Source: Magallana gigas
Lineage: Eukaryota
Assembly: GCF_963853765.1 (NCBI RefSeq)
Contig: NC_088857.1
Coordinates: 46,562,001 to 46,626,000 of the forward strand
DNA length: 64,000 nucleotides
Reading direction: 5' to 3'
Position 1 is the first letter of the stretch. Every line of letters starts with the position of its first letter. The position numbers and the translations under genes were made by a program. Positions 18,576 through 53,400 of this stretch are shown here, piece after piece. Below the pieces are notes generated by a model. The model did not search any database. It saw only the letters and a program-made list of their open reading frames with translations, and was not told the DNA's origin.

Positions 18576-19822
18576 ACCGTTATACCCCTGATGTATCAAG
18601 AGTTAATGTAGCAGTAGAACCGAAGAGAACAGAAACTACACATAGCCACATAACCTATGTTATAATGTTATAAACATTCATCATTTATGTGAAGCACCTT
18701 TTTGTTCTTTCATTATAGAAAACCTTAAATAACACGTTATCCCACTGACATAGTTTGTATCGTATTTTTCTGAGCATACTAATATTTTCTGTCATACTCT
18801 CTCTCTCTCTCAATGATGTCATCACTGATACGTTTATCTTTTCAGCAGCAGTGAATGATGTCACTGTGATCTGGAAAATTTTAACTTTCGTAAAATATCA
18901 TTTATTTAATGTATTTAACGATAGTTTTGGATAATATGCCATGTTCCACCAATATAATGACGATTTCTTTTGGGACGAACATATATCGGTGATTTTTGGA
19001 GCAAAAACATCAATCTCATTGATGATATTGTAGGTTAAAGACGTTGGCAAATTTTATTGACAACATAAATTCACTGGAATCTCATAGCGAATAATATTTT
19101 ATTTATACTTCAAGCAGCAAAATTATCAATTTATTTTTTCAATAATGACGTTTAAGGTTTCTAAAATCTAATGGTACTGTAGATACCCCCCCCCCCCCAA
19201 AAAAAATACCCCCTTTAAATTATCCTTAATGCAAAAGGCTGCATGTTTTTACAATGACCCATATATTTTATGGTATCGATGATCTGCATTGTGAGTTAAT
19301 AACATGCTTGGTCTGTCGAGCTCTATTTACAATATATACTGAGAAATATTGAAGTTTTAAAACGTTAAACATACAAAAGAGCAACTAATATAAGTCTGAA
19401 GTAAGCATAGAAGAATTTGCTTCTATAAGAATAATTATATCCTATAAGATTCGAAATACTAGTATCAAGAAACGTTCTCATTTTTAAATTAATAATCATA
19501 CTGATATCCAACTGGTGAAAAATTATAGTTAATACCTTGTAACCGTACGCGTATTGACCTACTTGTAACTTCATGTAAAAAAAATTCAAAAACACATTTA
19601 TTTGTATCTTCATTTATTGAAACAAAGATTCATTTGTATAAAAAAAATATTCGATGAAAATGTACACGATATGATGGCGCAAGACACCTTTTAACTCTAA
19701 CACATTTACGTAAAGAATCTTAGCACAAACTCAAGCGCAACCTAAGATACAAGTACTGCATAGAAACAGACTTTGATCAGTTAAGAGTGGAGAGGAAGAG
19801 TCTATATCATATTGAATAATGT

Positions 19823-22800
19823 CTAAGCTATACAGCGTCCACGGAAGATGTACACATCATCAAAGGCCATATCTCCGTTGTCTGTTCCTCCAATGATGGC
19901 CTCCAAGAAAATCTATAGATTGATAAATGAATAGAAAAATTAATAAAAATCTCAGCTTTATTAAAAAAACAACAACAGCAAAAGACTTTCTTTCAAATAA
20001 ACTAATACTGTCTATTATTTCAATACTGGTGTTGAATATTCAATGCAAATTGGTAAATATACCAAAAGTATCAATATAATTGCAATTGTGATTCAACACG
20101 AAACATTCTCTGTAAAAATTATTGATAGTCTATTGCACACTTTATAGTGAATCGAACATTGACATAGACAACCAACCTGGAACTTTGTGTTCATGGTGAT
20201 ATCTTTAGAGTACGTGTGCCAGCTTCCTCCCTGGTTGCCCTCCAAAGAATCAAGAACTGTGTCTCTATCTCCAACTCTTGTGTTCACTCTGAACTTGTGA
20301 ATGTCTTGTCCGTACAGGAAGTAGTAAAATCGGAGACAGTATTCACCGGCGTTCAGAACAGGGGAGATAACTCGGGCATCTTCGTTGTGTTCACCCTGTG
20401 CCCCAGCATAAACGTAGTAGCCTAGAAAATTAAATTTACAAAGGTTATTACTATCAATCTCGCTTGTTTACCAAGGCATTTGCGGATCTAGACTTCAAAT
20501 TCGTTTAATTCACGACGTGCAATTTTCAAAAAAGGCCTTGGACCTTCTCCCTTTAACAAAATCCCTCCTCAGACATTCCTTATCCCGTCCCCGGAAACTT
20601 AATAAGATCCTTGCATGCGTCCTCGTTTATTTAGGGGACAATTACCTGTTCCACTGCTGTAATCGGCCATTGGTCCGGTGACGTTGCTACGAGGAGATGG
20701 TCCCTTCATTCTCTGGAAGTCGAAATCGTCATCTGTCAACTGGGTCCACTCGCACAGATCGAATTCAAAGTTACAGTATGAGACGGTGCCTGCAGAAAGG
20801 TAAAAACCCTGTTATTCTTACTCAAAGACTTTTCAAGCTTCAAAAATATCTTTTGAACATTAAATCTTATAAATTTACATATGTAACGTACCGTCCAAAA
20901 GGTCGATCTTGTTTCCGTTATCTGTAATAGAAACAGAATACACACTATTGAAGCTTTGCTTTATGTGGCGGTTTTTATAGAGATGCTATATTATATACAC
21001 AGTCAGTAATTTATTATGAAGACATGTACAAAATTTTGCATGTGGTGCAAATCAAAAGATGATGCAACACCCGCATTATTGGATCTACAAAAATTACATT
21101 GAAGGATAGGAAGAAATTGATGTCAATATATAATCCTACATATGATTTTATAATGGAAAAAGTTTTTGTAGTGATAAATATTAATCTACAAGTCTTGTCT
21201 TGTGATAGACGAATATAATTATTACCAATTCCACATTTGTATTCTCTTTGGATGTTAAGAATGTCGTATTTGCTGAGAGAAACTTTGTATGGAATGCTGA
21301 CAGACTCGTATTTGGGGGTGAGAGTGGGTTTGGATGGGTCAATGGCCCAGGCGTATGGGAAGAAGAAAGTAATGGACTCAAAGTCGAATGGGTAGTTGAA
21401 GAATGTTGTGTCGTTAGTAATGTCGAAGAATCCACGATACTCTGCAAGACAAAGCCACATCGCAAATGATTCACTGTTTTTATATACACTCATTCGTTCA
21501 AAAAAGAATCTGCCGACAAAATAACGTATTTCAGTCGTTAAACAATGCAAAATCCGAAAGAAACTTTCCCTCTGGTTTAACACAATCAGTTGGGGAGTAA
21601 GTTAATAAGACTTAATCATTACCTGGGGCAATGTTTTCGTAGTGGACCATGACCTGGCTATCTCTGTCGGGACGACGGAACTCATTGAAGAAGCCGAGCA
21701 AGTACATGATGAGCTGCATAATGTCGGCCTTGGCGGCATCACGGTACAGATGGACGTATTGGACACCCCCAAGACGGCCGGGCAAGCTGTCTCCAGATCC
21801 ACTGTAAACAACAGGGGATGATTATTAAAAATTAAACAGGCAAATGTTGAATTGGAAAGCAAGCATTCTGAATCATCCAAAAAATCATCCAAATATGGTT
21901 TACCCTTTCCCTTTTTTTATTATCTTCATATGTCTTTAAAACGTTTAGTTCTATAAAAGTAATGTATGACTGTTTCATGTTAAAAGCACCTTTGATCTTA
22001 CAAGAAAAAACCCTCAGTATTTGTTGATACATTGACTTGTCAAATTAAAGACTGTGACACTCACTAGACAACTGATGTGAAAACAACGTAGTCCTTCTCC
22101 TGTGTTCTAGGAACAAACTGGACACACGGCATACCATTGGCGTGAGTGGAAAAAGAGATTTCCTGCATAGCTGCCAGGACCTTTTCTTTCATTGATCCAT
22201 CTAACAAAATAATCCTCTTATGAATATAACTACAAACACAATTCTATTGCAGCTAAATACTTTATAGCGATGTACTATTATATAACGTTTCTTGGATATA
22301 AAAAATATGAATAAATAATTAAATAAATGAATAGTTACCTAAACTAACGTCGAAGGCAACTGGGACTTTTCCATTTGCCCATAGCCTGCTGCTGTCTGTG
22401 ATAATATTTCTGAGTTGCTATGAAAAAGAAAAAACAAAAACTAAATATAATTAAATAAATTGTATTTAAAGATGATAGAAAACATAGAGTACAAAAAATT
22501 GTGCTGAAATGGTTATTCGCTGCGGTCATTTTGAAGTTTTCTATAACACTTTTGTTATTTTTCCCGACTTCACATGTAAAACTTTGAAGGATTTGAAAAG
22601 TTAAAGATCAAAAGTACTGATCGAGTGCTTCTTTGATATTACTGCCCATGATAAGGTATAGATAAACCATTTAAGGACGTTTTTTCTAGGTCGACATTAG
22701 TATTAAAATGATAAGACGTAGTGACGAAACGTCTAGGTCACTAAGAACACGCTGTCTCAACGTGACCTAGATTCATTTGTTCAAGACGCTAGGTGATCGC

Positions 22801-23377
22801 AATATTAGAACATTAAATGGCAAGCCAGGTCGTCTGATTCCTTGGTTTCTAACCAATTGCCTTTCGTATTGGCATTCGTTGCAAAGATATGCCGAGCAAG
22901 CTATTTGTATCCAATTTATTTTACCTATACGGTGTTTAAAGTGTTCTAGTGAATTCTATATTAAGAAACATTGGATTCAGCAAAATTTTACAAACGTAAG
23001 CTTCAGTTATTATAATAAGAGTTGAAAGAAATGCATTAACATTACATACAGCTTGGATTGAAATTTTGTTTAAAATGAGAATAGTATGTGCAACATAAAC
23101 GTATTTGTAAACAAGAAAGTTTCTAAATTATTTTCATTCATCAGCCGCTTTTGCATTTAACAAGATAGCTGCAAAAAGTATTACAGTAGTGCTGAAATTT
23201 AATATGTACAATCAAAGTTACAAGAGAACAGTACCTAATGGCATCCTTAGTGAATGCATAATGCGACATAAGAGCAGAATATAAATGATAAGAATTAAAA
23301 AACAAACGTACCCCGGGGACAGCAGACACACCCAGGACAACAGCGAAGCAGAGGACGATGTTGGTAGTGGACAACAT
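19823..23377 (-). CDS. Secreted astacin-like + MAM domain protein (meprin-like architecture) with a degenerate active site, 394 aa
   Basis: Exons 23312-23377, 22339-22417, 22065-22200, 21623-21801, 21226-21441, 20892-20921, 20646-20789, 20177-20421, 19823-19912 (1185 nt, all GT-AG, no stops). Signal peptide MLSTTNIVLCFAVVLGVSA; astacin hallmarks RNII...RLWANGKVP, AAMQEI..PCVQFVPRTQEKDYV, LGFFNEFRRPDRD, YPFDFESI, PTLTP, LSKYDILNIQREYKC; MAM hallmarks CNFEFDLCEW, TGPMADYSSGTGYYVY, YCLRFYYFLYG, GNQGGSW, GDMAFDDVYIFRGRC. Confidence 0.92.
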
Positions 23378-23413
23378 GATGACGATGTGGCACTCTGTCT
23401 TGAGAACTTTACC

Positions 23414-23421
23414 CTTTTATA
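23414..23421 (-). promoter_or_regulatory. TATA box of the astacin-MAM gene
   Basis: TATAAAAG on the minus strand, ending 37 nt upstream of the ATG at 23377. Confidence 0.6.
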
Positions 23422-26400
23422 ACTCTTCTAGGCACATGCGCATTCACAAGATACAATTAATTTAGCGTCTCGGTATCTAGAGAGACGATATTTATATTGG
23501 AATGGAAATCATTTTATCATTGGGCTTATTCTGTCTTATCTCACGCGATTGGATGACTCGAATCAAGGGTAACCGAGGTTACGGTGAACAAATTAACTCG
23601 GACACACATCTGTCTAGAATAGAAGACCATGTTGTTTGCAACGGGGTCACCGTTTTATTGTCATAAAGTGCAAAGAACTATTTCTGCAGTCTTCAAGTAT
23701 TTGACCGACATCCATTTTTACTCAGAGTGATAGCACAAATTCTTAAAGTTAAATCATTTGGTGCATTTCTTATATCTGTTACATGTACGTACCACTAAAG
23801 TGCAAGATATTGCAATAACATTATGTTGAAAGTCTGTGTTGCATTCATCCTTGTTTTGCGTATATCATAATATGAAGACAAAGATGAAAATGGATTTTAA
23901 GTGTTAAGCTATCAATCACCATTTAACAAAAGTTATGTCCCTTGGTCGCCATTTTTTGGGGAAAACCCATAGATTTTTCAAAGTTAGAGATTTGGTAACT
24001 TTGACATTTGATATAAAAATCCGTTGACGCTGTGTTTTTGTTTTGATTGTCCAAAGATGGGACAACCCACATATCGTAGAAAATAAGTGAATTCTATGAG
24101 ATTTCATCACAGGACGCCCAAATATTTGGTTCATTGGTAGCGTGAAAGGGGGATTTTTTTTCATAGGACCTTTATGTTGACACTGCAAAGAGAAATAACT
24201 TTTCCAAAGTGTGAATAGGTTCGATCAGTCTGAAAAGAAACGTGTTCTTAAAGGACATATTTCATCAGTTGGCATGATTTCTTTAACTAATAATCTAGTC
24301 ATTTATGTTCTACAAAACATGCCTAATTTTCATCTTTGAGATAGAACGTGTAAAAGTAAATGAATATGATACATGAACATTAGCTGTATTCTCACACGTA
24401 TATAACTTTTACAATATGTGAATCCTTAGATTGTGTTTGTTTATTGTAATTAATTATTTATTGTAATAAATGACTTATTTTACTCCTGAAAGGGTGTTAT
24501 TGTTTATGCGGTAAAGGCAGACAGGCATGAAAGTAAATGAAATAATTTTCATCGTGTGTCTATAAGTTAATGAGTAACTGTCAGAAATCTTATCTTGAAA
24601 GCCTATGATAAGCTAGTTTGTTTTGAAAAACAAAACTATGCTCGCACTGAGTGACATTGTAAATGATACTGCGTCACTGTTTTGCGTCGTTACCAGAGTA
24701 CTGTCCTCATACCGAGGTACATGTATATCAGTCACACTCTGTACTCAGAGGAGGTTCACCAAAGTGAAGTGCAGTTCAATGACGTACATTCATGTTGTTG
24801 TCCTCATCTCTTTGTATTTGATAAAGTCGATTTGATCAATTTGATAAGAATTTGATGACCCTTGGTCTGTGTCCATATGCGTTTATCAACTGTTTACGTT
24901 GGTCCTGGATTCGTGGAGAATTCTTCTTTTCTGTAGACAACACAAAATGATTATATCTGGGTAAGATGTTTGTATTTCAAACTTTGAAAGGGTATTATTA
25001 TAATCATATCTTAAATTCAACAAATATTGCCACTAAAGATTACTGTCATTAGACTCCCGTAAAAATTCACTCATTGCAACTCTATAACTCTTCCTGTCCG
25101 TGTCTTCTTTTTATTGTATATCAGTCTAAACTTTTTAGTTGAATTTTATTATTTTCTACTTCAACTCTGCGAGGTGCCCCTACATAAACGAAGAAAATTA
25201 CATGCATTTAAAACAAGCTATCCAGAAGTGGTCGCCAATTTCCCCTCGTGTGTATACTTTATTTACTTTTGAGGAAGTACCTTAAATATATGTGAATTTA
25301 ATAGTTATGAGTGGGAGTTTCACCCTTTTTAAATTACAGTTACTATCTTTATAATTAAACTCCCAAGTCCCTTCTCTGATCCTTACTAAAATAGACCCCT
25401 ATTAAGATACCAGCATAAATACATCTTTGAGTTAAAAGAAGATTCCTAATATCTTAATGATAGGAGTTTTGCTCACGAAACAAGATAAATCATTTAAAAT
25501 AAAGCAAAGAACCATCATGATTTTGGATATTTTACATATTTCCAATTGATCAAAACATATTTAATTTTAACTATGAACTATATTAATTTAGTTAAAATCA
25601 CTAACGTATCATATGCACACATTAACCATATTGAGATAAACATTTTACCAATTTTATAGTGTTCTCTCTTTATTTACACTTTTTAAATTATTTTGGTGCA
25701 ATTTAGATCGAAGCATTGTATTCCTCGAGATTATTGGGTTTCCGTCTATCTGTATCTTTCTAATGTCTCTTTTTGTAAAATGAATAGAAATTGATAAAAT
25801 TTGTTTATCAAACCTCACAGCTCTATATAAATCCTTAATCTAGTTCTTCAAACAAAGGTTGAGTCATTTCTGGTGTGGAGTGAAAACCTTAAGATTTTCT
25901 TTCCCGTATTTGACAAACAAGACCCCCGGGGACTAATTTCGTTTAAGAGTAATATTTGTCCTATTTTGAGATAGGTAGTGTAACTTAGGATTACCTACTT
26001 GAGAAATACCGATAACAGGAACTAGTGTGTATTGTTTACAAACAATCGTCCGTTTGATACAAAGAATTCATAACTGGTAATGGAGGACAACAAGCCCGTC
26101 AGCCATTGTTGACTGCATTAGGTTCTTTAAGTAAATACTATTGATACTATCAAGGATCAAATCATGTTAGATAAATTCTACCTTAACTTGTTGGATATCG
26201 GTATGTAAAATAAGAAGAAGAAAATGTATTTAATGTGCGCCGAAACGTGAAGATACATGCTGTTCAGTTTAAGTTAAATTCAAATGTACTGAATGCAAAG
26301 TTTAGAATTACAGATAACGTTTTTGAATGACACCAGACATGGATGTTATAAAAGATGTCTCGTTGCCGTGTTCCAAATGTTAGTTTGACCCATCAATGCT

Positions 26401-33800: not shown

Positions 33801-36800
33801 AATCATACAAATCATTTATCTATCATATAATTTAAATTTAAATCCCAAAATGTTTGATTTAGATTTAAACATATTTTTTTTTCAAAGTGCGTTAACTGTA
33901 TGTATCATAGTAAAACATTTTGATGTTCCTTAATGGCCAAATTTGATTTTTTTTTTCCAAACTGCGTTGACTTCGTACCAATCGTCACGCTTTTCAAAGT
34001 GGGTTGATGTGGTTAAAATTTAATGAACTTTGAAAGAAAAAAACATTCAGAGTGCGCTGCAACAAAATGTACCTTAAAGCTTTGATGGCTACACGTCGGT
34101 GATACTGCCACATAGGAGAGTAGGACGCCAGAGCTATGTCCTTGAATCCCTCGCTGATCAAAGAGACTTAACAAAACAAATCTAGAACTAATTAGCACTT
34201 CGACTAGAATGTCCTGTTGATGGTTTCTGCGGGTGTGAACGTAGCATGATTGAAGAAAAAAATATAAGCAGGGTTTTTACGTATTTGTATTTTTTCTGCA
34301 GAAAGGATAACACTGACGGTTAATAATTTTGCATTGCTTATTCTCTGTATGCATGAACCACCAAATGATTTAAATGTATATATCTTTCTTTAAAACTGTC
34401 ATTTTTTAATTCCTTTTTTCTTTGGTAAATTACTCTGTTACATTTCAAGACGTATTATTTGTTGCCTGAAAGAAGTCGAAACCACGCTCACATGTCACTG
34501 AAGTGGGGCGTCCAGCAAAATCTGCCTTTCTCTTCACCAAGGCTTCTATCACAACCTCATAGTTGTTTAGAAAGACAGTTGGGATAGGTCCTGTGTGCAA
34601 ACAACAAGGATGAGGGCATACAATAAACAGCTGATGAAAGACTCATTTCATATGAAGCTTTCAACGGAATTACCACCTATTCAAATTTCTAATGTAAACG
34701 GTACAACCAAGTTTGTTTATTCAGATATTGGGAAGATCGAATCTCTTAATACATATTTTTCTTCTATTTCTTCTGTAGACAATAAGAATGCGGCTTTACC
34801 TAATATGTATAGTTTATGTAGAGAAACACTTTGTAATAATATATAAATGAACAAGAAGTGTTAGACATTATTTCAATATTACCTGTTAATAAAGCAATTG
34901 GTCCTGATTTGGTTAGCCACAAAATGTTGAAGGCAACCCTTTTTACTACTGTAAAACCACTTACATTGTTATTTAATAGATCACTTGTTGATAATACTTT
35001 TCCATGTTTTTGGAAAATTGCTCACGTTATTCCTCTATTCAAAAAAGATGATCCGTCATTGGTTTCTAATTATAGACCGGTATCTTTGTTATCATGTGTT
35101 AGTAAAATTATGGAAAGAATCGTTTTTAAACATGTGTACAACTATTTTCATAGGAACAATTTATTTGATCGATATCAAGCCGGTTTTTTACCAGGTCATT
35201 CCACTGTTTATCAACTACTAGAAACGTATCACAGCATTGTTCAAAATATTGATGAAGGTAAATTTTCATGTATGATTTTTTGTGATCTGTCAAAGGCATT
35301 TGACAGAGTATGGCATAGCGGCCTTTTATTCAAGTTACAAACCTATGGAGTATGTGGAGATCTTCTTAAGTGGTTTTCTAGTTACTTAAGTCAAAGGTCC
35401 CAAAAAGTTATGTATAAAGATCTTTTGTCAAGCAAATCAGAAATTTCAGCAGGTGTACCCCAGGGATCTGTATTAGGACCTCTTTTATTTTTGATATATG
35501 TCAATGATGTGGCGGTTAATATGTTATCATTGTGTAGATTATTTGCTGATGACAGTTCGCTTCAATATTCTTCAAACAACATACTTAACATTGAATATAT
35601 TTTAAATCATGATTTAAAAATTTTGGAATCGTGGTCCAAAAAGTGGCTTCTTAAATTCAATTCATCAAAAACAAAGGTTGTTTTTTTTACTAAGAAGCAT
35701 AACTCTGTTTTACCTAAATTATTTTTTGAAGGCGATAGACTAGAGTTTGCCTCGACCCATCGCCATTTAGGACTTTTATTATCGCAAAATCTCAGCTGGT
35801 CTGAATACATTGATGGTATTGTAAACTCTGCATACAAAAAATTAGGACTCTTAAAAAAACTTATGTATAAATTGGGTAGAGAGCATCTCTCTAAATTATA
35901 CATTTCATTCATTAGACCTACCCTTGAATATGCGTCGATTGTGTGGGATGGCTGTTCTGTGCATGATGCAGACAAACTTGAAAAGGTTCAATTGTGAGCT
36001 GCACGAATTGTCACTGGGTTGCCAATTTTTGTACCAAGGGAATCGCTTTACTTAGAAACAGGGTGGGAAATTTTACAAACCAGACGATACATCGCCAAGA
36101 TGAAAACTATGTTCAAATTTAACATGGGGAGTCTGCCTGATTATTTATGTGATATTATTCCTAACAAGAGGGAAAATATATCGCGATACAACACACGAAA
36201 CAAGGATCAGTTTAATGTTCCTAAGTGCAGGTTAGACTTACTTAAAAAATCATTTGTACCCAATGCTGTCAATCAATGGAATTCACTAAATATAGAAGCC
36301 AGAACAGCCACCTCAATCAATTTGTTTTGCAAACATATGCCTAAAGTTACGAAACCCCCTATTTATTTTTCTTTTGGTAAACGCTGTACCAACATTATTC
36401 ATACAAAGCTGAGACATAACTGTGTATTAAACTATGATCTTTGTAAACGTAATATTATAAATAATCCGTTGTGTTTATGTGGTCAAACAGAAGATGTGTA
36501 TCATTTCTTTTTTTCTTGTAAAAAATACTCTAGAGCGAGAAACAACATGTTTGATCAATTGTTTATGTTAGATTTAGTCAATATTGATACTGATTTACTT
36601 TTATATAGCAACAACAACCTACCTTTACATATCAACAAAAGCATTTTTGCTTCTGTACAAAAATTTATTGACGAATCCTTGAGATTTAAATAATATTTCT
36701 TTGTGTATATCAATATTATATTTTCTTTTGTTCTATATTCATATGCATGACAACTATTGTTATATTTAAGGAGAGGAACTTGTAAGTTGTTAGAACTTGT

Positions 36801-42741: not shown

Positions 42742-44560
42742 TTAGAAAGTCTTTGACTTCTCCTCAGCTCTGGCTAACTTCATGAGTGAACTCTTATCTT
42801 CAAGTTTCAGTATTGACTGTATACTTTCAGTCTTGATGTCTACAGTATCTTGAATCTTCGTTTGATGACTCGTATCACTCTCTTCTTCTGTGCTTGTGGA
42901 ACATAATATTGCCTTTGTTGGTCCATCCCATACAGGCCATTTTTGGGGTTCCATTAACCATTCTGGTCTATTCCACCAGAGGGCATCCTCTTTGAATTTC
43001 TTGAGAGCAATTCCTCGTGTGAGATAGTCAGCAGGATTACAGAATGTTGGACAATACTGCCATGTTGAAGATTCGCTGATCTCCCGAATTTCATTTACTC
43101 GGTTTGCTACAAATCTGTTTGCCGTTTTCTGTGAAATGATCCAGTGAAATACAATTTCACTGTCACACCAAAAGTAGATTTTGTTAACTCCAGTTATTTC
43201 TTTTACATGTTTTCCCAATCTTGCTCCAATAAGCGCTCCCATGAGTTCTAGTCTTGGAAGTGTGATCTGCTTGATTGGTGGCACTCGATTTTTGGCCATA
43301 AGTAATGTTATCTTGTTCTTTGATAACAAATAGACACATGCACCATATGCTTGCTGACTTGCATCGGAGAAAACGTGCAATGAATCACAACTACAATCAA
43401 TTGATGAACTGTTATTTCTGTTTATTCTGATGTCCAGTGCATCATAAATTTCTGATGAGATTTCTCTCCATGTAGTCTGCATAGACTTAGGCAGTTTTTC
43501 ATCCCATTTCAAATTATCTTTCCATAACTCTTGCATGAAAATCTTCGCCTTCACAGAAATAGGACTTAATAATCCAAGTGGATCAAACACCTTTGATGTT
43601 TCTCTCAATACTTCTCGCTTTGTAGTCACACGATCCTTCTTTTGTCCAGTATCATTCTTTGCATATTGGAGAGTATCTTCTTGTGGATTCCGTTTCATTC
43701 CAAGAACTTTAACGACAGAGTCTTCATCCGCTGTTTTTTCTGCTTTAGACAAGTTTTGTAGCATCTCACTGTTGGAGCTCCAGGAACGAAGATTAAAACC
43801 TCCTGCTGCAAGTAAGGTTCTTGATTCTTTGTAGAATTTCAAAGCTGTTTCCTCACTCTGGAAGCTGGCTAAAACATTGTCAACATAGATATTTTGTTCA
43901 AGAAGAGATGAAATTTCATTTGCATTCTCTTGAAAATGTTTTATCAGAGTAGCGCTGAGGATAAAAGGTGAACAGGTGGACAGATCGAAAGCGGTAAGTT
44001 GTCAATGGACTCAATGCATTACCGGGATCACTAAGCCAAAGGAATCGTGTTGAATCACGGTCTTTCTGGTGAAGCTCAATTTGAAGGAAGGCCTTTTCAA
44101 TATCTGCTGTTACTGCAAACTTGTTCAGTCTGAATCTGGTCAATATTGACGTGATGTCATTCATCATAGGGGAGTATGGCTCTATGCAGTCGTTTAGACT
44201 AACATGTCCAGTTTTGTCCTTGCAGCTACAACCGTACACAATTCTAATCGGGGTTGTAGTGCTGTCCTTTTTCACAGGGTGATGAGGGATATAATGGACT
44301 CTATTTCCTGAATTTTCTGGATCTTCAACTTTCTCAATAAATCCTTTGTTTGCTTGATCCTGTATTATCTCACTGTACAGCTTTAACATTTTAGGATCCT
44401 TTGCTAATCTCTGAATAACATTTTCTGTTCTTCTTTTCACAATCTCGTAGTTTGTAGGTAAGCAGGGATAGTTTTCTTTCCAGGGGATTTTAGCAACATA
44501 ATGACCATCCTCTTTATCGATTGATGTAGCAGCATAATTCAAGAGTTTCTCCTTGCCTTT
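42742..44560 (-). pseudogene. Bel/Pao pol remnant: RT and RNase H, no integrase
   Basis: YIPHHPVKK, SLND, ADIEKAFLQI, RFLW, a frameshifting deletion near 43980, then YVDN, GGFNLRSW, VFSDASQQAYG, TLPRLEL, NPADYLTRG; ends KSSLMKLARAEEKSKTF*. Confidence 0.92.
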
Positions 44561-44565
44561 TATTA

Positions 44566-45587
44566 CTAAAACCGATTTGGTTTGACTTTTCCGATCGCGT
44601 CGCGTTCAACTTGTTCAGCTACGTCATACATAAACAATACCCGCACCTTAACCACAGTTTTTTTTATTGGTGGATTCAGCTTACTGCTGATTGGCTGCTG
44701 GTTAACTAAGACTAAATTATGCACGGACAGAACAACAACATATCAGAGAATGAAAAACTCACATGGGTACTCGTGACTGTCAAAATTGGGCTATTTTTCG
44801 AAAGTGTACACTTGTGATAAAACAATACATACGGTACATAACATATATAGCTGTAGCTCTGTGTATAAATTTTGGGTTAGAAAATATAAAGCTACAGTGC
44901 ATACAATACTTACATGTACAAAAAAAACTTTACGGCAATTTGCCGCGTATAAAAATAACACTATTTTTAAAAAATATTTACATCATACCATACCACATTT
45001 TGTGCAAATAATCCATTTAAATAATTCTTCATTTAGTTTACTACTGTTAATAATTGTAGCTTTACCCGCCCCAAACTTTCTCCTATTAAACAACCTTTAA
45101 CCGTACTCGGAAAGCGGATCAAGAACTGTATTTTTTATGTATGTAAACAAACCAGTGTTCATGTATGGAGCGGGTGATCGGGGGTTCAGAGACAGGTAAA
45201 ATAAAGAAATCTGCAGTAAATGGTTTGTGGATATTTTAGTATATATATTTACACCGAAAGTGATAGGGCAACAGAAGAGAAACGAATCGGACACTTGCCT
45301 AATGAAGACGCACATGTACAAACCTCCTTGCACTCTCCACTTCCGTCTCGTTCTTTCACACCATCGTTCAATACTTTTATTGACTGTCGATTGCCGATCG
45401 AAAGGTGTAGAAATCGAGGAATTCATACCTATCACTTTGACTGGCAAGTTAGTAGGTAATACATGTGCATTATACATTAACGGTATTTACATGAAATCAT
45501 CGCTTAGCACATGCAACTTTTAAATATTATATTTTTTATAACGCCGTACTCTGGACCGTAGCTTGAGGCTATGGTTTAACGCCCGTT

Positions 45588-45657
<70 letters not shown>

Positions 45658-45898
45658 AGCACAGAATTTAAACAAACGGGATAGTCGCTTTTGAATGAAT
45701 AATATTGGGGGGAAATAAACTGTTCTGAGAAATCCTTCAGCTCTGGCATTGCATAAGCGTATACTGATAACTCGGCCTAAAAATAGGAGTTAACCAATCA
45801 TATAGTTTTCACACCGGCGGCGTGTACAATTTATGCATGACGTAGCTGACAGAAATGATCGTGACGCTATAGGAAAAGTCAAACCAAATCGGTTTTGA
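44566..45898. mobile_element. Non-autonomous TIR element (1.33 kb, TA TSD) nested in the Bel/Pao pol
   Basis: About 70-bp imperfect TIRs beginning AAAACCGATTTGGTTTGACTTTTCC; TA at 44564-44565 and 45899-45900. Removing the element plus one TA restores the pol frame (DDHSEEILIKGKEKLLNYAATSI). Confidence 0.88.
45592..45654. repeat. (GA)n microsatellite within the nested element
   Basis: GA run. Confidence 0.95.
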
Positions 45899-47926
45899 TA
45901 ATATCTCTTCACTGTGATCATCAATTCCCATGGATTCAATTTTCCAGAATTTTTCCAGGTCAACCTCTTCCACTTTATGATCTGCCAAAATATGGAACAT
46001 CCCTGAATGCTGTTTTCCAGATGAGTGGATAGGTCCAGATATAAGATATCCAACCTTTGATTCGACCGCTGTGGGTCCATTTCCTCTGATGATTCTGTCT
46101 CCTACTATGCTCCAATAGTAGTCTGCACCAATTAGCATTGAAATATGGAACTGCTCATCTGAGCTGACTGGGTGTGCCAATTTCAATCCCTTTAGGTATG
46201 AGAGTTCCCTGATATTGACACGTGCTCTGTTGAAGATTGGAGCTGCTATTGTTGGAATGATGATGACCTCCATTGGAATTTTCTCTCCGGTTTGTGTTTC
46301 TAGTTGAACTGTAGCTTTCTCTAGGTTATGAACTTCACTGTTCTTGTCTCCAAATGCTGAAATCTTTAGAGTGATAAATCCCGTTGATTTTATGTCAAGT
46401 TTCTGTGCTAACTCCTCAGTTATAAATGAGTTTTTGAGCTCCTTCATCTAGCAATACATTGCAGTTGACTTCTTGATTTCTATACCAAATTGGTGTCACA
46501 GCAGTTTTTAGCAGCACTTCAGTGTTGGCTCTAACATGTGATGAAGAGTGAAGCTGGAATGACTGCTCTCGTTGATGTGGCTGTTTGAATTGTGTGCTCT
46601 CGGAATTAACAGCTCTCTCTGAAGTACTTCGTGGGAATTGAGAATTGCGGCAAATACTAGTATGATGAAACTTTTTGCAATTCCTACACTTGAAATGCGA
46701 CTGACATTCGCTTACTTTGTGTTTTCTAAAGCAATTAAAGCAGACTTTCTTCTGTTTGACGATTGATATCCTTTCTTCATAATCAGTGATGACATGGCAA
46801 GCCGCTGGCGAGTGTTTTCCATTACAAAACAAGCATTGCTTTACCGTAGTTCCTTGCTTGATGGTTTTCTTATGGTTTGCTCCTGTAACAAGTTAGCAGT
46901 TGGGTTGAACTCCTGTGATTCTTGGTTAGATCTTGTATTGCTAGCATTTCCAGCATCCTGAACGCAAAGTTCCTTCTTTATTGCTCTCCTCACTGAGTTT
47001 AAATCCCAGTTGTCATCTCCTTTGTCCCGAGTAATGTTCTTCCGAATGTCTGCTGGGAGCTTGTTGTAAATCATGGGTGTTAGAATCGTCCCATACGTGG
47101 TTTCCTCAGTGCCCAAGGACTCCAAACCTCTAATGCAGCACTCCATTTTGTCATAAAAAATTCTCAAACAATCTGGATTAGACTTTGGTAGTTGTATGTT
47201 GATAAGAGCCTGTATGTGCGCATTGACGATTTTATGATTTTGGCCATATCTTTCAAATAAGACATCTATTGCCTGTCTGTAGTTTGTATTGGTCAAACTA
47301 AATCCTGAGATAACACGAAGTGCTTCTCCACACAACAATGACCGAAGGTAGCTAAATTTTTCTACATCAGATAAAGTGTTGTTTCTATGGATACTTGTAT
47401 TGTAACAATCCCAAAATGTTTCCCATTCAAGAAGATTTCCCTCAAAAATTGGTAGATTGAGTTTCGGTAACTTATGGGAGTATGCTGAGTGAGTAGCACC
47501 ACTATTGGATTTTGGATTCAAATTGAGGCTTGTAACGGTCTGCTGAGAAAAATCATGCGTCGAATGAGCATTCTCTTCGATTTGAAGATTTTCATTGTGA
47601 TCCAAATACTGGTAACTGCTGGCAGTTGCATTTAAAGTCGATCCTTGTACTAAGAGATGTTTTTTGATTTTCTTAATTTTTGACTCTATATTAAATTTGT
47701 ACTCATCTGCCTCAAGGATTTCCTTTTCCACATCCTCTTCAACTGTATCTTCTAGAATTCTGTCATCTAGATTCCTAAGAATTTCTTGCTTCTCCTTTAG
47801 TGTTGATACTATAGTCTCTATATCCTCTGTATTGTTTTCCTCTAAAAATGATTCTTCCAATTTTCTAAAAAGTCTTGTTACAGCACTTCTTTGTCCTGAA
47901 CGAACTGCTCTAAGTTTAGAAGTCAT
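45899..47926 (-). pseudogene. Bel/Pao gag-protease remnant
   Basis: KLPKLNLPIFEGNLLEWETFWD, LSDVEKFSYL, Cys/His knuckles (CLFCNGKH..C; CFNC..H....C), protease LLDEGAQ, YLISGP, LEKFWKIE; 1-nt frameshifts near 46890 and 46430. Confidence 0.92.
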
Positions 47927-50426: not shown

Positions 50427-53400
50427 TTATTTGAATCTTTTCTTTACGATAATTCGTAAGTCGGCGGGACATTCGGTTCCAAAAAAATCACGTTGCACAC
50501 CTACAAAGTTCGGTTTGGTGCCTTCCGGAAGTGATATTTCAAACCATTGAAGAAGATGGACGCACATCATTAAAATTTCCGACTTTGCTATAGATTCTCC
50601 AAGGCATACTCTCCTTCCAGCAGAAAATGGTAGCCAACTGTCCAGTTTTGTAGGATCCATTTTACCATCTTCATCCAAGTAACGGAGCGGATCAAATTTC
50701 TCGGGATCTTTCCAATATTTAGTGTCACGATGGAGAGCAAAATGGTTGATTAGGACAACCGTGTCTTTTGGAATGTCGTACCCACCTTTGTAAAAACAAA
50801 ACGCGTTATCTAACTTGTAATTCATCACTAGACATTACGAAAGTGTTTAATACTTTTCAGTTACTAATACCTATATATACGAATTGATTTTGTGATTTCA
50901 ATTTTTTCTTGATCTTCTATTTTTCATGTTTGTTTTGTAGTGAACATGTATTTTGTTCTGATATTATGCCCCCTTATAAAAGAAATAGTTGAGAACGTTT
51001 TTCCCTATCAATCCTATGAACATAAAGTCTTTGCCAATATTGTTATTGCATGTTTTTGATATGTAAAATAAATAATAAATTCAATATAAAAACTAGGCAC
51101 TGAAACCCACAACTTACCAACGTGTGTATCGCAGATGGTAAGATGTGGCAAACCCAGGCCTGCTATTACTCCCGCCCTCATTGTCTCATAGATGCAGGCC
51201 TCGGTGTAAGGCAACGACTGTCTGTCGGCGATAGATGGACAACGCCTACCTAAAAGTAAAGGATTTCTAAAAGGTACTTACATTTTCCCTATTGCTCTTG
51301 ATAAAATTCTCATTAATTCTACAATCACGATGGCAGCATTTCAAAATATCGATATGTGTGATTAACTTGTTTGTCAGGTATTTATACTACAAATTACAAA
51401 ACATTATTTTGTTCATTTCTAAGCTTTAATATATATATTTGATCGGTGTAGCACACATTCTAATAAATACTATATCGTAAAAGGTGAACATATACCAATT
51501 TTTTTGTCGATCTCCGCCTGACATTTTGCCTGTATTTCCGGAAGTCCAGACATGAAGCACAAGAACCATTCTAGGGTCAGTCTCGTCGTATCTACACCAG
51601 CTGTAAACGAATGAAAGCAAGTTCTGTATTCAGTTAAAACGCTTAACTCAAACAGATGTTTCGATGTATCAAAAGTTTGGTGACGTTTTTCACGTCACAG
51701 GTAGAGGTAAAGTAAATAATGTCTATGTCTTCATGCTGAAAGGTGACCAAACTCATTACACCAGGAGAAAATGGTTAAGGACAAAGCTAAATAAAAAAAG
51801 ACGTCAACCATGACAGTAAGATCTAATATATACATGTGTCTGCGTCTTTGTCCATGATAACACTACGAATCAATTGTGTATTGTAGAGTCCAATGGATTC
51901 AAATTACGTATTGTTGGGGTGCAAGTGGGGTCTACATAATTTAAAGAAATAAAATAACATAAATGTGTCAATATGCTAATATTTAATTGTAAAATTGCTA
52001 AACTATATAAATATTAGCTATAAGAAATCATTCTTTGAACATTATGAGGTGATATTTTATCTTTATATTTGGGCATAAATGGATTTTACCCATTCTGACC
52101 AAAATTATTATCTCATAATACTCAAAGAATGATTCATTATTCCTTATTTAAATACTCTTACTCTGTGTGTTTGTAAAACACGCTCAACATAATGCATTAT
52201 TTGGGTTTAACCTAGCTAATTGGGAATATATAAGGGAAGTAGACCAACACGACCATGTGGTAGTGGGTAGGATAAGTTCTCACCAAAAAAGATATCCGAA
52301 ACGGTTTGTACAAGATAAGTATCATTTAATTTCTCAAGGGATTCGTCGTCTCCAGATTTTTCCGCCTCAGATCTGGCTACTAGAAGGTGATCGGTAAAAT
52401 CCCGGATGTTATCTATAAATCAAATAAGATTCTTAAATATTACATACTTAGTGGAAAAAAATCGTTAAAATTGTTATTACCGGGACACGTAACAATATGC
52501 TTCAAGCATATCTCAATGCAATCAAAACTGAATTAATCAAAACTGAAAAACTTTAACTAGAAACTGACACATGGGAAGTTTGACGCAGGAACAGCGATAA
52601 GGTTTTGTTGAAATGTCAAAACTTTTCACTGGACTCAACACTTCTTGTGGGCAGTTTTGCTTTTTGTTACCAAAAATTTAAATCATGAAGTACTTAGTAT
52701 TCCAACACTTCAGGAACGAGGATGGCTTACTTGGATCAAACGTTTCCTGGTGTTCGTGTAAGAGTTTATGAAGGAATGAAAACACTCTATCCGCAGCTTC
52801 TTTGATGATGACGTAACGTCCGGACGGGTACACGTCCTTCAGGAACGGAAGCATATCCTCTCGGAGACCGTTCCCTACAGTTTTGTTTATTAGGTCTTTT
52901 TCTCGGAGCAGGAACTCTACATCAGGGTCACCAATCTCCTTACTTCAGAGAAATTAAGAGAGGCTTTTATCATTCATCATAAACAACTTGTGCGTGTTAG
53001 CTGATTGTGAGCAACTGAATGAATTTCACAGAAGACATGCACATTCTAGTTCTAGTATATAATGCTAAAAAGCAACGTTTTCTTCTCAAAGCAATAGTAT
53101 ACACCCACTTTTCTCCAAAACAGAGGGTATAAAGCTGGTAGAAGACGATATTGTTAAGGTGAGATTTCATTGCAATGGGTCCCTTCTCTGTCGCCATCAT
53201 GTTCATCACTTTTGTCATATTATCTTGTGTTAGTTTCTCAAGCAGATCTCCTTGTTGATAATTTCTGGAATTCAAACCAACCTAGTGCTATTCACTTCTA
53301 ACATGCAAGAATTATTTTAATTACATAATAACTTTATAGGCGTATTCTTACAGACATTTATTGAATGTTGCATTTTTTACATGGAGGGGGGTGAAACGGA

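What the first reader, a model, noticed from the sequence alone, without database searches (positions are those of the whole stretch)
19823..23377. Intact, secreted astacin-MAM protein with a completely dismantled active site (pseudo-protease)
Seen: a 9-exon ORF of 394 aa with no stop or frameshift, a signal peptide, canonical splice sites and a TATA box. At 21681-21716 the astacin motif HExxHxxGxxHE reads QLIMYLLGFFNE. All three Zn-binding His (now Q, Y, N) and the catalytic Glu (now L) are replaced. The Met-turn SxMHY reads SITFF, so the Tyr ligand is lost as well. Fold-defining residues (LW..G.VP, E..RPDRD, FDFES, LS..DI..I...Y.C) and the whole MAM domain remain. Established: these residues are required for astacin catalysis; MAM domains mediate adhesion and oligomerisation; oysters are known to reuse dead enzymes as abundant secreted proteins (SOD-like cavortin/dominin). 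Inference: a maintained non-catalytic binding protein, such as an inhibitor decoy, substrate-masking, immune-recognition or matrix protein. I cannot tell from the sequence whether this subfamily has been described.
Basis: partly seen in the sequence, partly recalled or inferred. Interest (0 to 1): 0.78.

Follow-up and report, generated by a model that had tools for sequence, protein, structure and literature searches.

The report
Oyster dead astacin-MAM protein, already described
This is a real, expressed and strongly conserved oyster gene for a secreted protease look-alike that has lost every catalytic residue, but the same protein family (scallop myMEP1A, a cadmium-binding gut-gland protein) and its loss of the zinc-binding histidines in oysters were already published in 2025.

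Summary
On the minus strand, nine GT-AG exons (23377 to 19823) give a 394-aa protein with a signal peptide, an astacin (M12A) domain and a MAM domain. The zinc motif at 21716-21681 reads QLIMYLLGFFNE and the Met-turn reads SITFF. PolyA RNA reads confirm seven of the eight introns at the base and show no alternative exon.

The gene is single copy and not decaying. dN/dS against Saccostrea is 0.07: 0.04 in the dead astacin domain and 0.09 in MAM. All nine coding SNPs listed in the reads are synonymous. Exon sizes match Saccostrea exactly.

Eight orthologues (oysters, a pearl oyster, a scallop, mussels, two unnamed) all carry Q, Y and N in place of the three histidines, L/I/V in place of the catalytic Glu, and T in place of the Met-turn Met. 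All lack a prodomain and one astacin disulfide.

It is not new. Zheng et al. 2025 (PMC12357810) purified the scallop orthologue myMEP1A as a 44-kDa, midgut-gland-specific Cd-binding protein. They noted Q122/Y126/N132 and reported that the histidine loss is conserved in Magallana gigas XP_034302681.1.

Most likely it is a maintained non-catalytic binding protein. The physiological ligand is still open.

The parts
23415..23421 (-). TATA box (TATAAAA), 44 nt upstream of the ATG
   Evidence: Sequence read. RNA depth falls to about 0 upstream of 23399 in the polyA runs.
23312..23377 (-). Exon 1: ATG and signal peptide (aa 1-22, MLSTTNIVLCFAVVLGVSAVPG)
   Evidence: Covered by RNA reads. Same 66-nt exon in Saccostrea. 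Low pLDDT for residues 1-24.
22339..22417 (-). Exon 2: mature N-terminus (QLR-NIITDSSRLWANGKVPVAF). N26 aligns with residue 1 of mature crayfish astacin, so there is no prodomain.
   Evidence: Joint 22200>22339 in reads.
22065..22200 (-). Exon 3: N-terminal sub-domain of the astacin fold, with C74 (partner of C223)
   Evidence: Joints on both sides in reads.
21623..21801 (-). Exon 4: astacin active-site helix region
   Evidence: Pfam Astacin 25.8 bits, profile positions 60-113. Joints 21801>22065 and 21441>21623 in reads.
21681..21716 (-). Dismantled zinc motif QLIMYLLGFFNE (canonical HExxHxxGxxHE): H>Q123, E>L124, H>Y127, H>N133, with G130 and E134 kept
   Evidence: Q, Y and N are invariant in 8 orthologues.
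21226..21441 (-). Exon 5: C-terminal sub-domain of the astacin fold, conserved NDT sequon (N163), C223
   Evidence: Pfam Astacin 27.4 bits, profile positions 126-188..
21362..21376 (-). Dismantled Met-turn SITFF (canonical SxMHY): M>T178, H>F179, Tyr ligand>F180
20892..20921 (-). Exon 6: 30-nt linker between the astacin and MAM domains
   Evidence: Joints in reads. The same 30-nt exon occurs in Saccostrea, Pinctada and Mytilus. Low pLDDT for 226-233.
20646..20789 (-). Exon 7: start of the MAM domain (C241, C248; E244, D256, D259 of the Ca-type metal sites)
   Evidence: Pfam MAM 21.9 bits. Site mapping.
20177..20421 (-). Exon 8: core of the MAM domain (C312, T273, Y285)
   Evidence: Pfam MAM 42.8 bits..
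19823..19912 (-). Exon 9: end of the MAM domain (D383, C392) and TAG stop at 19825-19823. No transmembrane tail.
   Evidence: Joint 19912>20177 in 70 and 234 reads.
19665..19822 (-). 3' UTR (at least this far)
   Evidence: RNA contig 19665-19914 and read depth. AATAAA at 19618 and 19602.

Best explanation
This is the oyster (Magallana/Crassostrea gigas or a very near relative) orthologue of scallop myMEP1A. It is a single-copy, transcribed, strongly constrained gene for a secreted, prodomain-less astacin-MAM protein that cannot work as an astacin-type zinc protease.

Its ancestor was an active astacin-MAM enzyme. Before oysters, pearl oysters, scallops and mussels diverged, it lost the three zinc-binding histidines (now Q, Y, N), the general-base Glu (now L/I/V), the Met-turn Met and the Tyr switch, the activation prodomain and one disulfide. 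The fold was kept.

Shown here: the gene model, its expression, purifying selection, shared derived residues, and the fold by homology and model.

Inferred from established astacin enzymology: no metalloprotease activity (about 95%).

Inferred mechanism: it acts by binding, not cutting. The only experimentally supported ligand in the family is a divalent metal. Cd2+ binds native and recombinant scallop protein, and this was attributed to two Ca2+-type oxygen-ligand sites in MAM whose side chains are all present here. I put about 40% on metal (Ca/Cd) binding or buffering in the digestive gland as the physiological role. About 30% goes to a protein or peptide ligand held in the dead cleft. The remainder is unknown.
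For: - Gene model: nine GT-AG exons, 394 aa.
- Domains: Astacin and MAM.
- RNA: seven introns confirmed at the base in stranded polyA reads. Exon depth is 20-200x from about 1% of the run, and no competing joints reach the 10% reporting level.
- Copy number: single copy. The next best match in the genome is 51% identical over exon 4 and has an intact HELMHVLGFFHE.
- Polymorphism: 9 of 9 coding SNPs in the reads are synonymous.
- Divergence: dN/dS against Saccostrea is 0.071, with the astacin domain at 0.039 and MAM at 0.093.
- Gene structure: exon sizes are identical in Saccostrea, and the core exons (179, 216, 30, 245, 87 nt) are the same sizes in Pinctada and Mytilus.
- Orthologues: all eight have MQ[LIV]xxYxxGxxN and S[IV]T[FM][FY], while about 30% of columns are invariant overall.
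- Sharp family boundary: the profile score drops from 532 to 116 bits after the last orthologue. In an exhaustive HMMER scan, every hit with the Q..Y..N motif was either a fragment or model of this oyster gene or a short fragment matching the mussel or lgn orthologues.
- Structure: the model of the Saccostrea orthologue has pLDDT 77. Its astacin domain superposes on crayfish astacin with TM 0.85 and rmsd 2.2 A. The best full-length hits are LAST-MAM and the meprins.
- Literature: myMEP1A is a 44-kDa, Cd-binding, midgut-gland-specific protein with Q122/Y126/N132. The His loss is reported as conserved in M. gigas XP_034302681.1 and five other bivalves.
- Metal sites: the MAM metal-site side chains E244, D256, D259, T273 and D383 are present here.
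Against: - No oyster tissue, protein or metal-binding data were available here; the run metadata are coded.
- Cd binding by the scallop protein may be a side effect of ordinary structural Ca2+ sites in MAM rather than the function.
- The site assignment in the paper rests on a homology model, not on mutants.
- The dead astacin domain is more constrained than MAM. This is not what one expects if MAM alone were the working part.
- Absence of protease activity is inferred, not measured.
- The SNP list from the reads tool was truncated (12 rows not shown), so a nonsynonymous variant could have been hidden.
- dS against all species other than Saccostrea is saturated.
Confidence: 0.85

Rival explanations
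1. The working part is the dead cleft. The protein holds a peptide or protein ligand without cutting it: a substrate trap, a decoy for astacin inhibitors, or a masking or recognition protein. MAM would serve only for oligomerisation.
For: The astacin domain is under stronger constraint (dN/dS 0.039) than MAM (0.093). The replacement residues Q123, Y127, N133 and T178 are invariant in eight orthologues, against about 30% of columns overall. Pseudopeptidases of the sister M12 ADAM group act through protein-protein contacts (PMC11266112). The fold and the cleft-forming elements (RPDRD, upper-rim strand) are retained.
Against: No partner is known and no interaction data exist. The one experiment on the family found metal binding, not a protein ligand. 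High constraint may reflect only folding or secretion requirements.
Confidence: 0.3
2. It is a recently inactivated gene on its way to becoming a pseudogene, or an annotation artefact in which the real transcript uses another exon with a canonical motif.
For: None found. The UniRef M. gigas model P0005 differs from my model by a 48-aa internal deletion, which shows that automated models of this locus disagree.
Against: The same replacements occur in oysters, a pearl oyster, a scallop and mussels. dN/dS is 0.07 and 9 of 9 SNPs are synonymous. PolyA RNA reads support exactly the exon 3-4-5 joints that place QLIMYLLGFFNE in the message. No alternative joint, and no joint for the P0005 deletion, is reported.
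Confidence: 0.01
3. It is still a hydrolase, using a non-canonical mechanism or another metal held by Q/Y/N/E.
For: The replaced positions are invariant polar residues rather than random ones. E134, next to the third ligand position, is kept in 6 of 8 orthologues.
Against: The general-base Glu is replaced by L/I/V in every orthologue. The Met-turn and the Tyr switch are gone, and there is no latency prodomain. By established astacin and metzincin enzymology, each of these alone abolishes or cripples activity. Zheng et al. also conclude that it may not possess peptidase activity.
Confidence: 0.03

Closest known systems
[quoted passage not shown] 2025, PMC12357810)
   Same: Same architecture: signal peptide, astacin-like domain and one MAM domain, about 392-394 aa. 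The replacements match, offset by one residue: Q122/Y126/N132 against Q123/Y127/N133 here. The MAM acidic metal-site residues are the same. The scallop Ylistrum sequence used in that paper's alignment (P0061) aligns end to end with the window protein. The gene is single copy in this genome, so it is an orthologue.
   Different: It comes from a different species. The oyster protein has not been purified or assayed. The paper mentions a C-terminal transmembrane domain for the scallop protein, whereas the oyster protein ends with the MAM domain (…YIFRGRCIA) and has no hydrophobic tail. Site 1 main-chain position D252 is L253 here.
Human meprin alpha and beta (PDB 7UAE, 4GWN)
   Same: Astacin catalytic-domain fold followed directly by a MAM domain. 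They are the best sequence hits among solved structures (E about 1e-20) and among the top structural hits.
   Different: Meprins are active zinc proteases with HExxHxxGxxHE, a Met-turn and a prodomain, plus TRAF, EGF and transmembrane parts. This protein has none of these. Identity is about 23%.
LAST-MAM, astacin-MAM of the horseshoe crab Limulus polyphemus (PDB 8A28)
   Same: Same two-domain layout and similar length (382 residues). It is the top Foldseek hit, E 9.5e-28.
   Different: LAST-MAM is a zymogen-forming active enzyme with a prodomain and an intact zinc site. Identity is 23%.
Crayfish astacin (PDB 1AST), prototype of MEROPS M12A
   Same: The catalytic-domain fold matches: TM 0.85, rmsd 2.2 A, 28% identity. 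The C42-C198 type disulfide, the RPDRD segment and the Glu after the third ligand position are retained.
   Different: All zinc ligands, the general base and the Met-turn are absent. So are the second disulfide and the prodomain.
ADAM pseudopeptidases (ADAM2, 7, 11, 22, 23; M12B)
   Same: These are metzincin domains with degenerate HExxH motifs, often starting with Q, that are kept for non-catalytic binding roles (PMC11266112).
   Different: They belong to a different subfamily and have a different architecture. ADAM pseudopeptidases typically keep the Met-turn, whereas here it is lost. The review lists no astacin (M12A) pseudoenzymes.

Membership tests
Astacin family (MEROPS M12A, Pfam PF01400): homology | Significant match to the astacin catalytic-domain profile and fold | tested here: met
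   Exons 4 and 5 score 25.8 and 27.4 bits, above the 22.5-bit cut-off. The orthologue P0053 scores 86 bits over profile positions 2-188. The model superposes on 1AST with TM 0.85.
Astacin family: active peptidase | Zinc-binding and catalytic motif HExxHxxGxxHE | tested here: not met
   The motif reads QLIMYLLGFFNE at aa 123-134. All three His and the catalytic Glu are replaced, in all 8 orthologues.
Astacin family: active peptidase | Met-turn SxMHY with the Tyr zinc ligand or switch | tested here: not met
   It reads SITFF (aa 176-180). T replaces Met in all 8 orthologues, and F replaces Tyr in 7 of 8.
Astacin family: active peptidase | N-terminal prodomain with the Asp-switch (FxGD) that gives latency | tested here: not met
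   Only about 3-6 residues lie between the signal peptide and N26, which aligns with residue 1 of mature astacin. Active relatives in the same alignment show F/W-x-GD prosegments.
Astacin family: active peptidase | Two conserved disulfides of the catalytic domain | tested here: not met
   C74 and C223 (the first pair) are kept. Both cysteines of the second pair are replaced (GSGDSLPG; DAAK) in all orthologues.
MAM domain (Pfam PF00629) | Profile match and four conserved cysteines | tested here: met
   Exons 7-9 score 21.9, 42.8 and 16.3 bits, covering profile positions 1-157. The orthologue scores 104 bits. C241, C248, C312 and C392 are present.
Bivalve myMEP1A subfamily (Zheng et al. 2025) | Q, Y, N at the three former zinc-ligand positions | tested here: met
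   Q123, Y127 and N133 match Q122, Y126 and N132 of the scallop numbering.
Bivalve myMEP1A subfamily (Zheng et al. 2025) | Conserved oxygen-ligand (Ca-type) metal sites in MAM | tested here: met
   E244, D256, D259, T273 and D383 are present, and F258 and Y285 (main-chain ligands) are conserved. One main-chain position is L instead of D.
Bivalve myMEP1A subfamily (Zheng et al. 2025) | Cd2+ binding by the protein | not testable with these tools
   Shown only for native and recombinant scallop protein.
Bivalve myMEP1A subfamily (Zheng et al. 2025) | Digestive (midgut) gland-specific expression | not tested
   Expression in polyA RNA runs is shown, but the tissue of those runs is not given.

The most novel reading that the evidence does not exclude
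The invariant Q-Y-N triad, with the retained Glu next to it, is not debris. It is a re-tooled oxygen-ligand pocket in the old zinc site that binds a hard divalent cation (Ca2+/Cd2+) or a small non-peptide ligand. On this reading the astacin domain, not only MAM, is the working part. That would be the first astacin catalytic site converted into a storage or recognition site, and it would explain why this domain is the more constrained one.
Probability: 0.15. Interest if true: 0.6.

Novelty: already known. Interest (0 to 1): 0.33.

Why it matters
Pseudoenzymes of the astacin family are almost unstudied: a 2024 review of pseudo-metallopeptidases lists none. This one is ancient, single copy, well expressed and tightly conserved across Pteriomorphia, which includes commercially important bivalves.

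Its scallop orthologue has been linked to cadmium accumulation in edible tissue. The oyster gene is therefore a reasonable candidate in studies of metal load in shellfish.

The points added here go beyond the 2025 paper. The catalytic apparatus is completely dismantled: general base, Met-turn, Tyr, prodomain and one disulfide. The replacement residues are invariant. Constraint is stronger on the dead domain than on MAM. Together these argue that the published "MAM does the binding" picture may be incomplete. None of it is a new kind of system.

Tried and rejected
- **Paralogues in the window or genome.** tblastn of the protein against the window finds only the gene itself. A search of the whole genome with exon 4 finds only itself, then active astacins at 51% identity or less. 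So this is not a tandem family.
- **Pfam Astacin scan of the genome.** It gave 84 exon hits, and this locus was too weak to appear. That is consistent with its degenerate motif.
- **Alternative exon or isoform restoring HExxH.** No such joint appears in four RNA runs.
- **The 48-aa deletion in UniRef model P0005.** It has no read support and is treated as a model artefact.
- **dN/dS with more distant orthologues.** dS is saturated: NG86 returns -1 or values above 1.7, and YN00 fails. Only the Saccostrea pair is used.
- **Literature.** I searched for 'crystalline style' with astacin (0 papers), astacin with pseudoprotease (only a review without astacin cases), accession numbers (only the 2025 paper), and 'meprin A subunit alpha' with gigas (nothing specific).
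- **Supplement of the 2025 paper.** No sequence text is held.
- **Earlier findings of this scan.** Blank.
- **The look-up of sequencing runs.** Busy on the first try and answered on the second.
- **The spliced 394-aa window protein.** I did not hand it to the remote tools because it has no reference form. The 88%-identical Saccostrea orthologue P0053 stood in for Pfam, the PDB search and the structure model.
- **Complex prediction.** None was run, because I claim no specific protein partner.
Full report

Yes. From the raw window I anchored nine minus-strand exons: 23377-23312, 22417-22339, 22200-22065, 21801-21623, 21441-21226, 20921-20892, 20789-20646, 20421-20177 and 19912-19823. Every intron starts with GT and ends with AG. 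The joined CDS is 1185 nt and translates to 394 aa without a stop.

The motif QLIMYLLGFFNE is aa 123-134 and sits exactly at 21716-21681. SITFF is aa 176-180. A TATAAAA lies at 23421-23415, 44 nt upstream of the ATG.

Exon by exon, Pfam reports Astacin (PF01400) for exons 4 and 5 and MAM (PF00629) for exons 7-9. The 88%-identical full-length Saccostrea orthologue gives Astacin 86 bits over profile positions 2-188 and MAM 104 bits.

**2. Is it transcribed as modelled?**

One reads-tool call on two stranded polyA raw-read runs and two contig runs gave exact joints for introns 2 to 8. The joints are 19912>20177, 20420/1>20645/6, 20788/9>20891/2, 20921>21226, 21441>21623, 21801>22065 and 22200>22339. 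Each is supported by 17-234 reads per raw-read run.

Nearly all first mates lie on the + strand, as expected for a minus-strand RNA in a dUTP-type library. Exon depth is 20-200x from about 1% of each run, and intron depth is near zero.

No alternative joint at the reporting level could bring in another exon. The 48-aa internal deletion seen in the UniRef Magallana gigas model P0005 has no read support.

The intron 1 joint was not listed, because the tool skipped a repeat at 22417-22456. Exon 1 is covered. The same exon 1/2 join occurs in P0005 and, with an identical 66-nt exon, in Saccostrea.

**3. Is it maintained or decaying?**

The gene is single copy. A whole-genome six-frame search with exon 4 finds only itself at 100%. 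The next hit is 51% identical, on contig C3, and reads HELMHVLGFFHEQSRPDRD, an intact active site.

All nine coding differences listed between the reads and the reference are synonymous. The tool's list was truncated, so this is suggestive rather than complete.

I spliced the orthologous genes from Saccostrea cucullata, Pinctada imbricata and Mytilus trossulus out of their genomic loci by exact protein threading. Saccostrea has exon sizes 66/79/136/179/216/30/144/245/87, identical to the window. Pinctada and Mytilus share the core sizes 179/216/30/245/87.

dN/dS for window against Saccostrea is 0.071 (dN 0.080, dS 1.13; YN00 gives 0.077/1.24). By domain, the dead astacin domain is 0.039, linker plus MAM is 0.093 and the signal peptide is 0.49. 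More distant pairs are saturated at synonymous sites.

This is strong purifying selection, and it is strongest on the domain that lost its chemistry.

**4. How old and how uniform is the loss?**

The orthologues come from word-indexed searches with P0005 and with a profile. They are:
- Saccostrea (394 aa)
- Pinctada (388 aa)
- Ylistrum balloti, a scallop (392 aa)
- Mytilus trossulus (378 aa)
- Mytilus californianus (393 aa)
- two unnamed transcript-derived sequences

After the last orthologue the profile score falls from 532 to 116 bits.

In the alignment of eight orthologues with six active astacins:
- His1 is Q in all eight orthologues.
- The catalytic Glu is L, I or V in all eight.
- His2 is Y in all eight.
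- His3 is N in all eight.
- The Met-turn Met is T in all eight.
- The following His is F in seven of eight and M in one.
- The Tyr ligand is F in seven of eight.

Only about 30% of astacin-domain columns are invariant overall.

All orthologues also lack the second astacin disulfide. They keep an N-x-T sequon at N163. None has a prodomain: N26 aligns with residue 1 of mature crayfish astacin, whereas active relatives in the same alignment carry F/W-x-GD prosegments.

An exhaustive HMMER scan of 1.84 billion representatives with exon 4 returned 52 hits. Hits with the Q..Y..N pattern were either fragments or models of this oyster gene, or short fragments matching the mussel or lgn orthologues. 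The other hits I read have H-x-x-x-H, apart from two: P0017, described under section 9, and P0021, a hit to a low-complexity repeat with no astacin domain.

The shared derived states and the shared gene structure indicate one loss before oysters, scallops and mussels diverged. From general knowledge, that places it in the early Palaeozoic.

**5. Fold**

An AlphaFold2 model of the Saccostrea orthologue, built on a 24-sequence alignment, has mean pLDDT 77, with mostly 85-97 in the astacin domain.

Foldseek against the PDB gives LAST-MAM of Limulus (8A28) and the human meprins as the best full-length matches. Crayfish astacin matches the first domain with TM 0.85, rmsd 2.2 A and 28% identity. MAM domains match the second domain. 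Sequence search of the PDB agrees.

**6. What is known**

Zheng et al. 2025 (PMC12357810) looked for the cadmium carrier in the midgut gland of the scallop Mizuhopecten yessoensis. [quoted passage not shown]

Their main findings were:
- Its mRNA is midgut-gland specific.
- Recombinant protein competes with a Cd-porphyrin complex for Cd.
- A homology model on human meprin alpha (7UAE) shows Q122, Y126 and N132 at the 'Zn-missing site'.
- The same model shows two conserved Ca-type sites in MAM.

They state that the lack of the three histidines is conserved in Argopecten, Magallana gigas (XP_034302681.1), Mytilus edulis, Ostrea edulis, Pecten and Ylistrum. They also state that the protein may not possess peptidase activity.

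The window protein is identical to the M. gigas UniRef model outside that model's deletion. Its numbering is offset by one from the scallop (Q123/Y127/N133). It carries the MAM site side chains E244, D256, D259, T273 and D383.

**7. Mechanism**

That the protein is not an astacin-type protease follows from established metzincin enzymology. The three His hold the zinc, the Glu is the general base, and the Met-turn and Tyr complete the site. All are gone, and the latency prodomain is gone too. I put this at about 95%.

That it is a functional binding protein follows from the selection and expression data. What it binds is not settled.

Metal binding at the MAM Ca-type sites has experimental support in scallop and conserved residues here (about 40%). 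However, it could be incidental to structural calcium sites.

Three observations point to a function located in the old cleft: the dead domain is more constrained than MAM, the replacement residues are invariant, and all are oxygen-donor or aromatic side chains. That function could be a protein or peptide ligand (about 30%). Less likely, it is a re-tooled hard-cation or small-ligand pocket (about 15%, the novel case).

Decay, mis-annotation and residual protease activity are each at a few per cent or less.

**8. Novelty and score**

- RNA-level confirmation of the oyster gene model
- quantitative selection data by domain
- conservation of exon structure
- the complete list of lost astacin features
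- the invariance of the replacement residues

It is a well-behaved member of a known, if barely studied, pseudo-astacin subfamily. Interest is 0.33.

**9. Seen in passing**

- P0017 is a database protein with three HExxH-less astacin domains fused to a tyrosine-kinase domain.
- The window contains retroelement ORFs and a P450 exon.
- The reference differs from all reads at three synonymous sites.
- In one run, an RNA contig reads from upstream of the TATA box into exon 1.

Noticed in passing
P0017 (database protein, hit; not in the window): A 1244-aa protein with three Astacin (PF01400) domains and a C-terminal tyrosine-kinase domain (PF07714, residues 884-1194). By eye all three astacin domains lack HExxH (QLMRILGFHRE, MQILLSILGFGIE, LGELLVVLGFTAE). 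It looks like a receptor kinase with pseudo-astacin ectodomains. Source organism unknown.
   Followed up: partly
window 21370-21686 (aa 133-180) versus P0005: The UniRef Magallana gigas model A0A8W8NRV0 (P0005, 346 aa) is identical to the window protein except for a 48-aa internal deletion between two FF repeats (GFF|FPY). No RNA joint supports it, so it is probably a gene-model artefact.
   Followed up: yes
window 21684, 21437, 22145: At these three synonymous coding sites every raw read in the two polyA runs carries the non-reference base, and the contig runs agree at 21684 and 22145. At 21437 one contig run (X2) keeps the reference base. The assembled individual therefore carries alleles absent from the two raw-read runs.
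   Followed up: partly
window 23322-23500: In run X3, one RNA contig (438 nt, depth 104) runs from beyond 23500 into exon 1, upstream of the TATA box. The polyA raw-read runs show almost no depth there. It could be a minor upstream start, read-through or DNA carry-over.
   Followed up: no
window 34858-35994 (+): A 379-aa ORF with a reverse-transcriptase domain (RVT_1, 114 bits), followed by a 224-aa ORF (36019-36690) with no Pfam hit. Probably a retroelement.
   Followed up: partly
window 42745-47926 (-): A run of ORFs with DUF1759, DUF1758 peptidase and Pao retrotransposon peptidase A17 domains. This is a BEL/Pao-type LTR retrotransposon, split over several frames.
   Followed up: partly
window 50430-50828 (-): A 133-aa ORF matching the C-terminal haem-binding part of cytochrome P450 (113 bits). 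It is an exon of a neighbouring P450 gene.
   Followed up: no
G000:C3:2396000-2405999 (L006): The nearest paralogue of the pseudo-astacin in the same genome has an intact HELMHVLGFFHEQSRPDRD and weak MAM-like matches downstream. It is probably an active astacin-MAM gene.
   Followed up: partly
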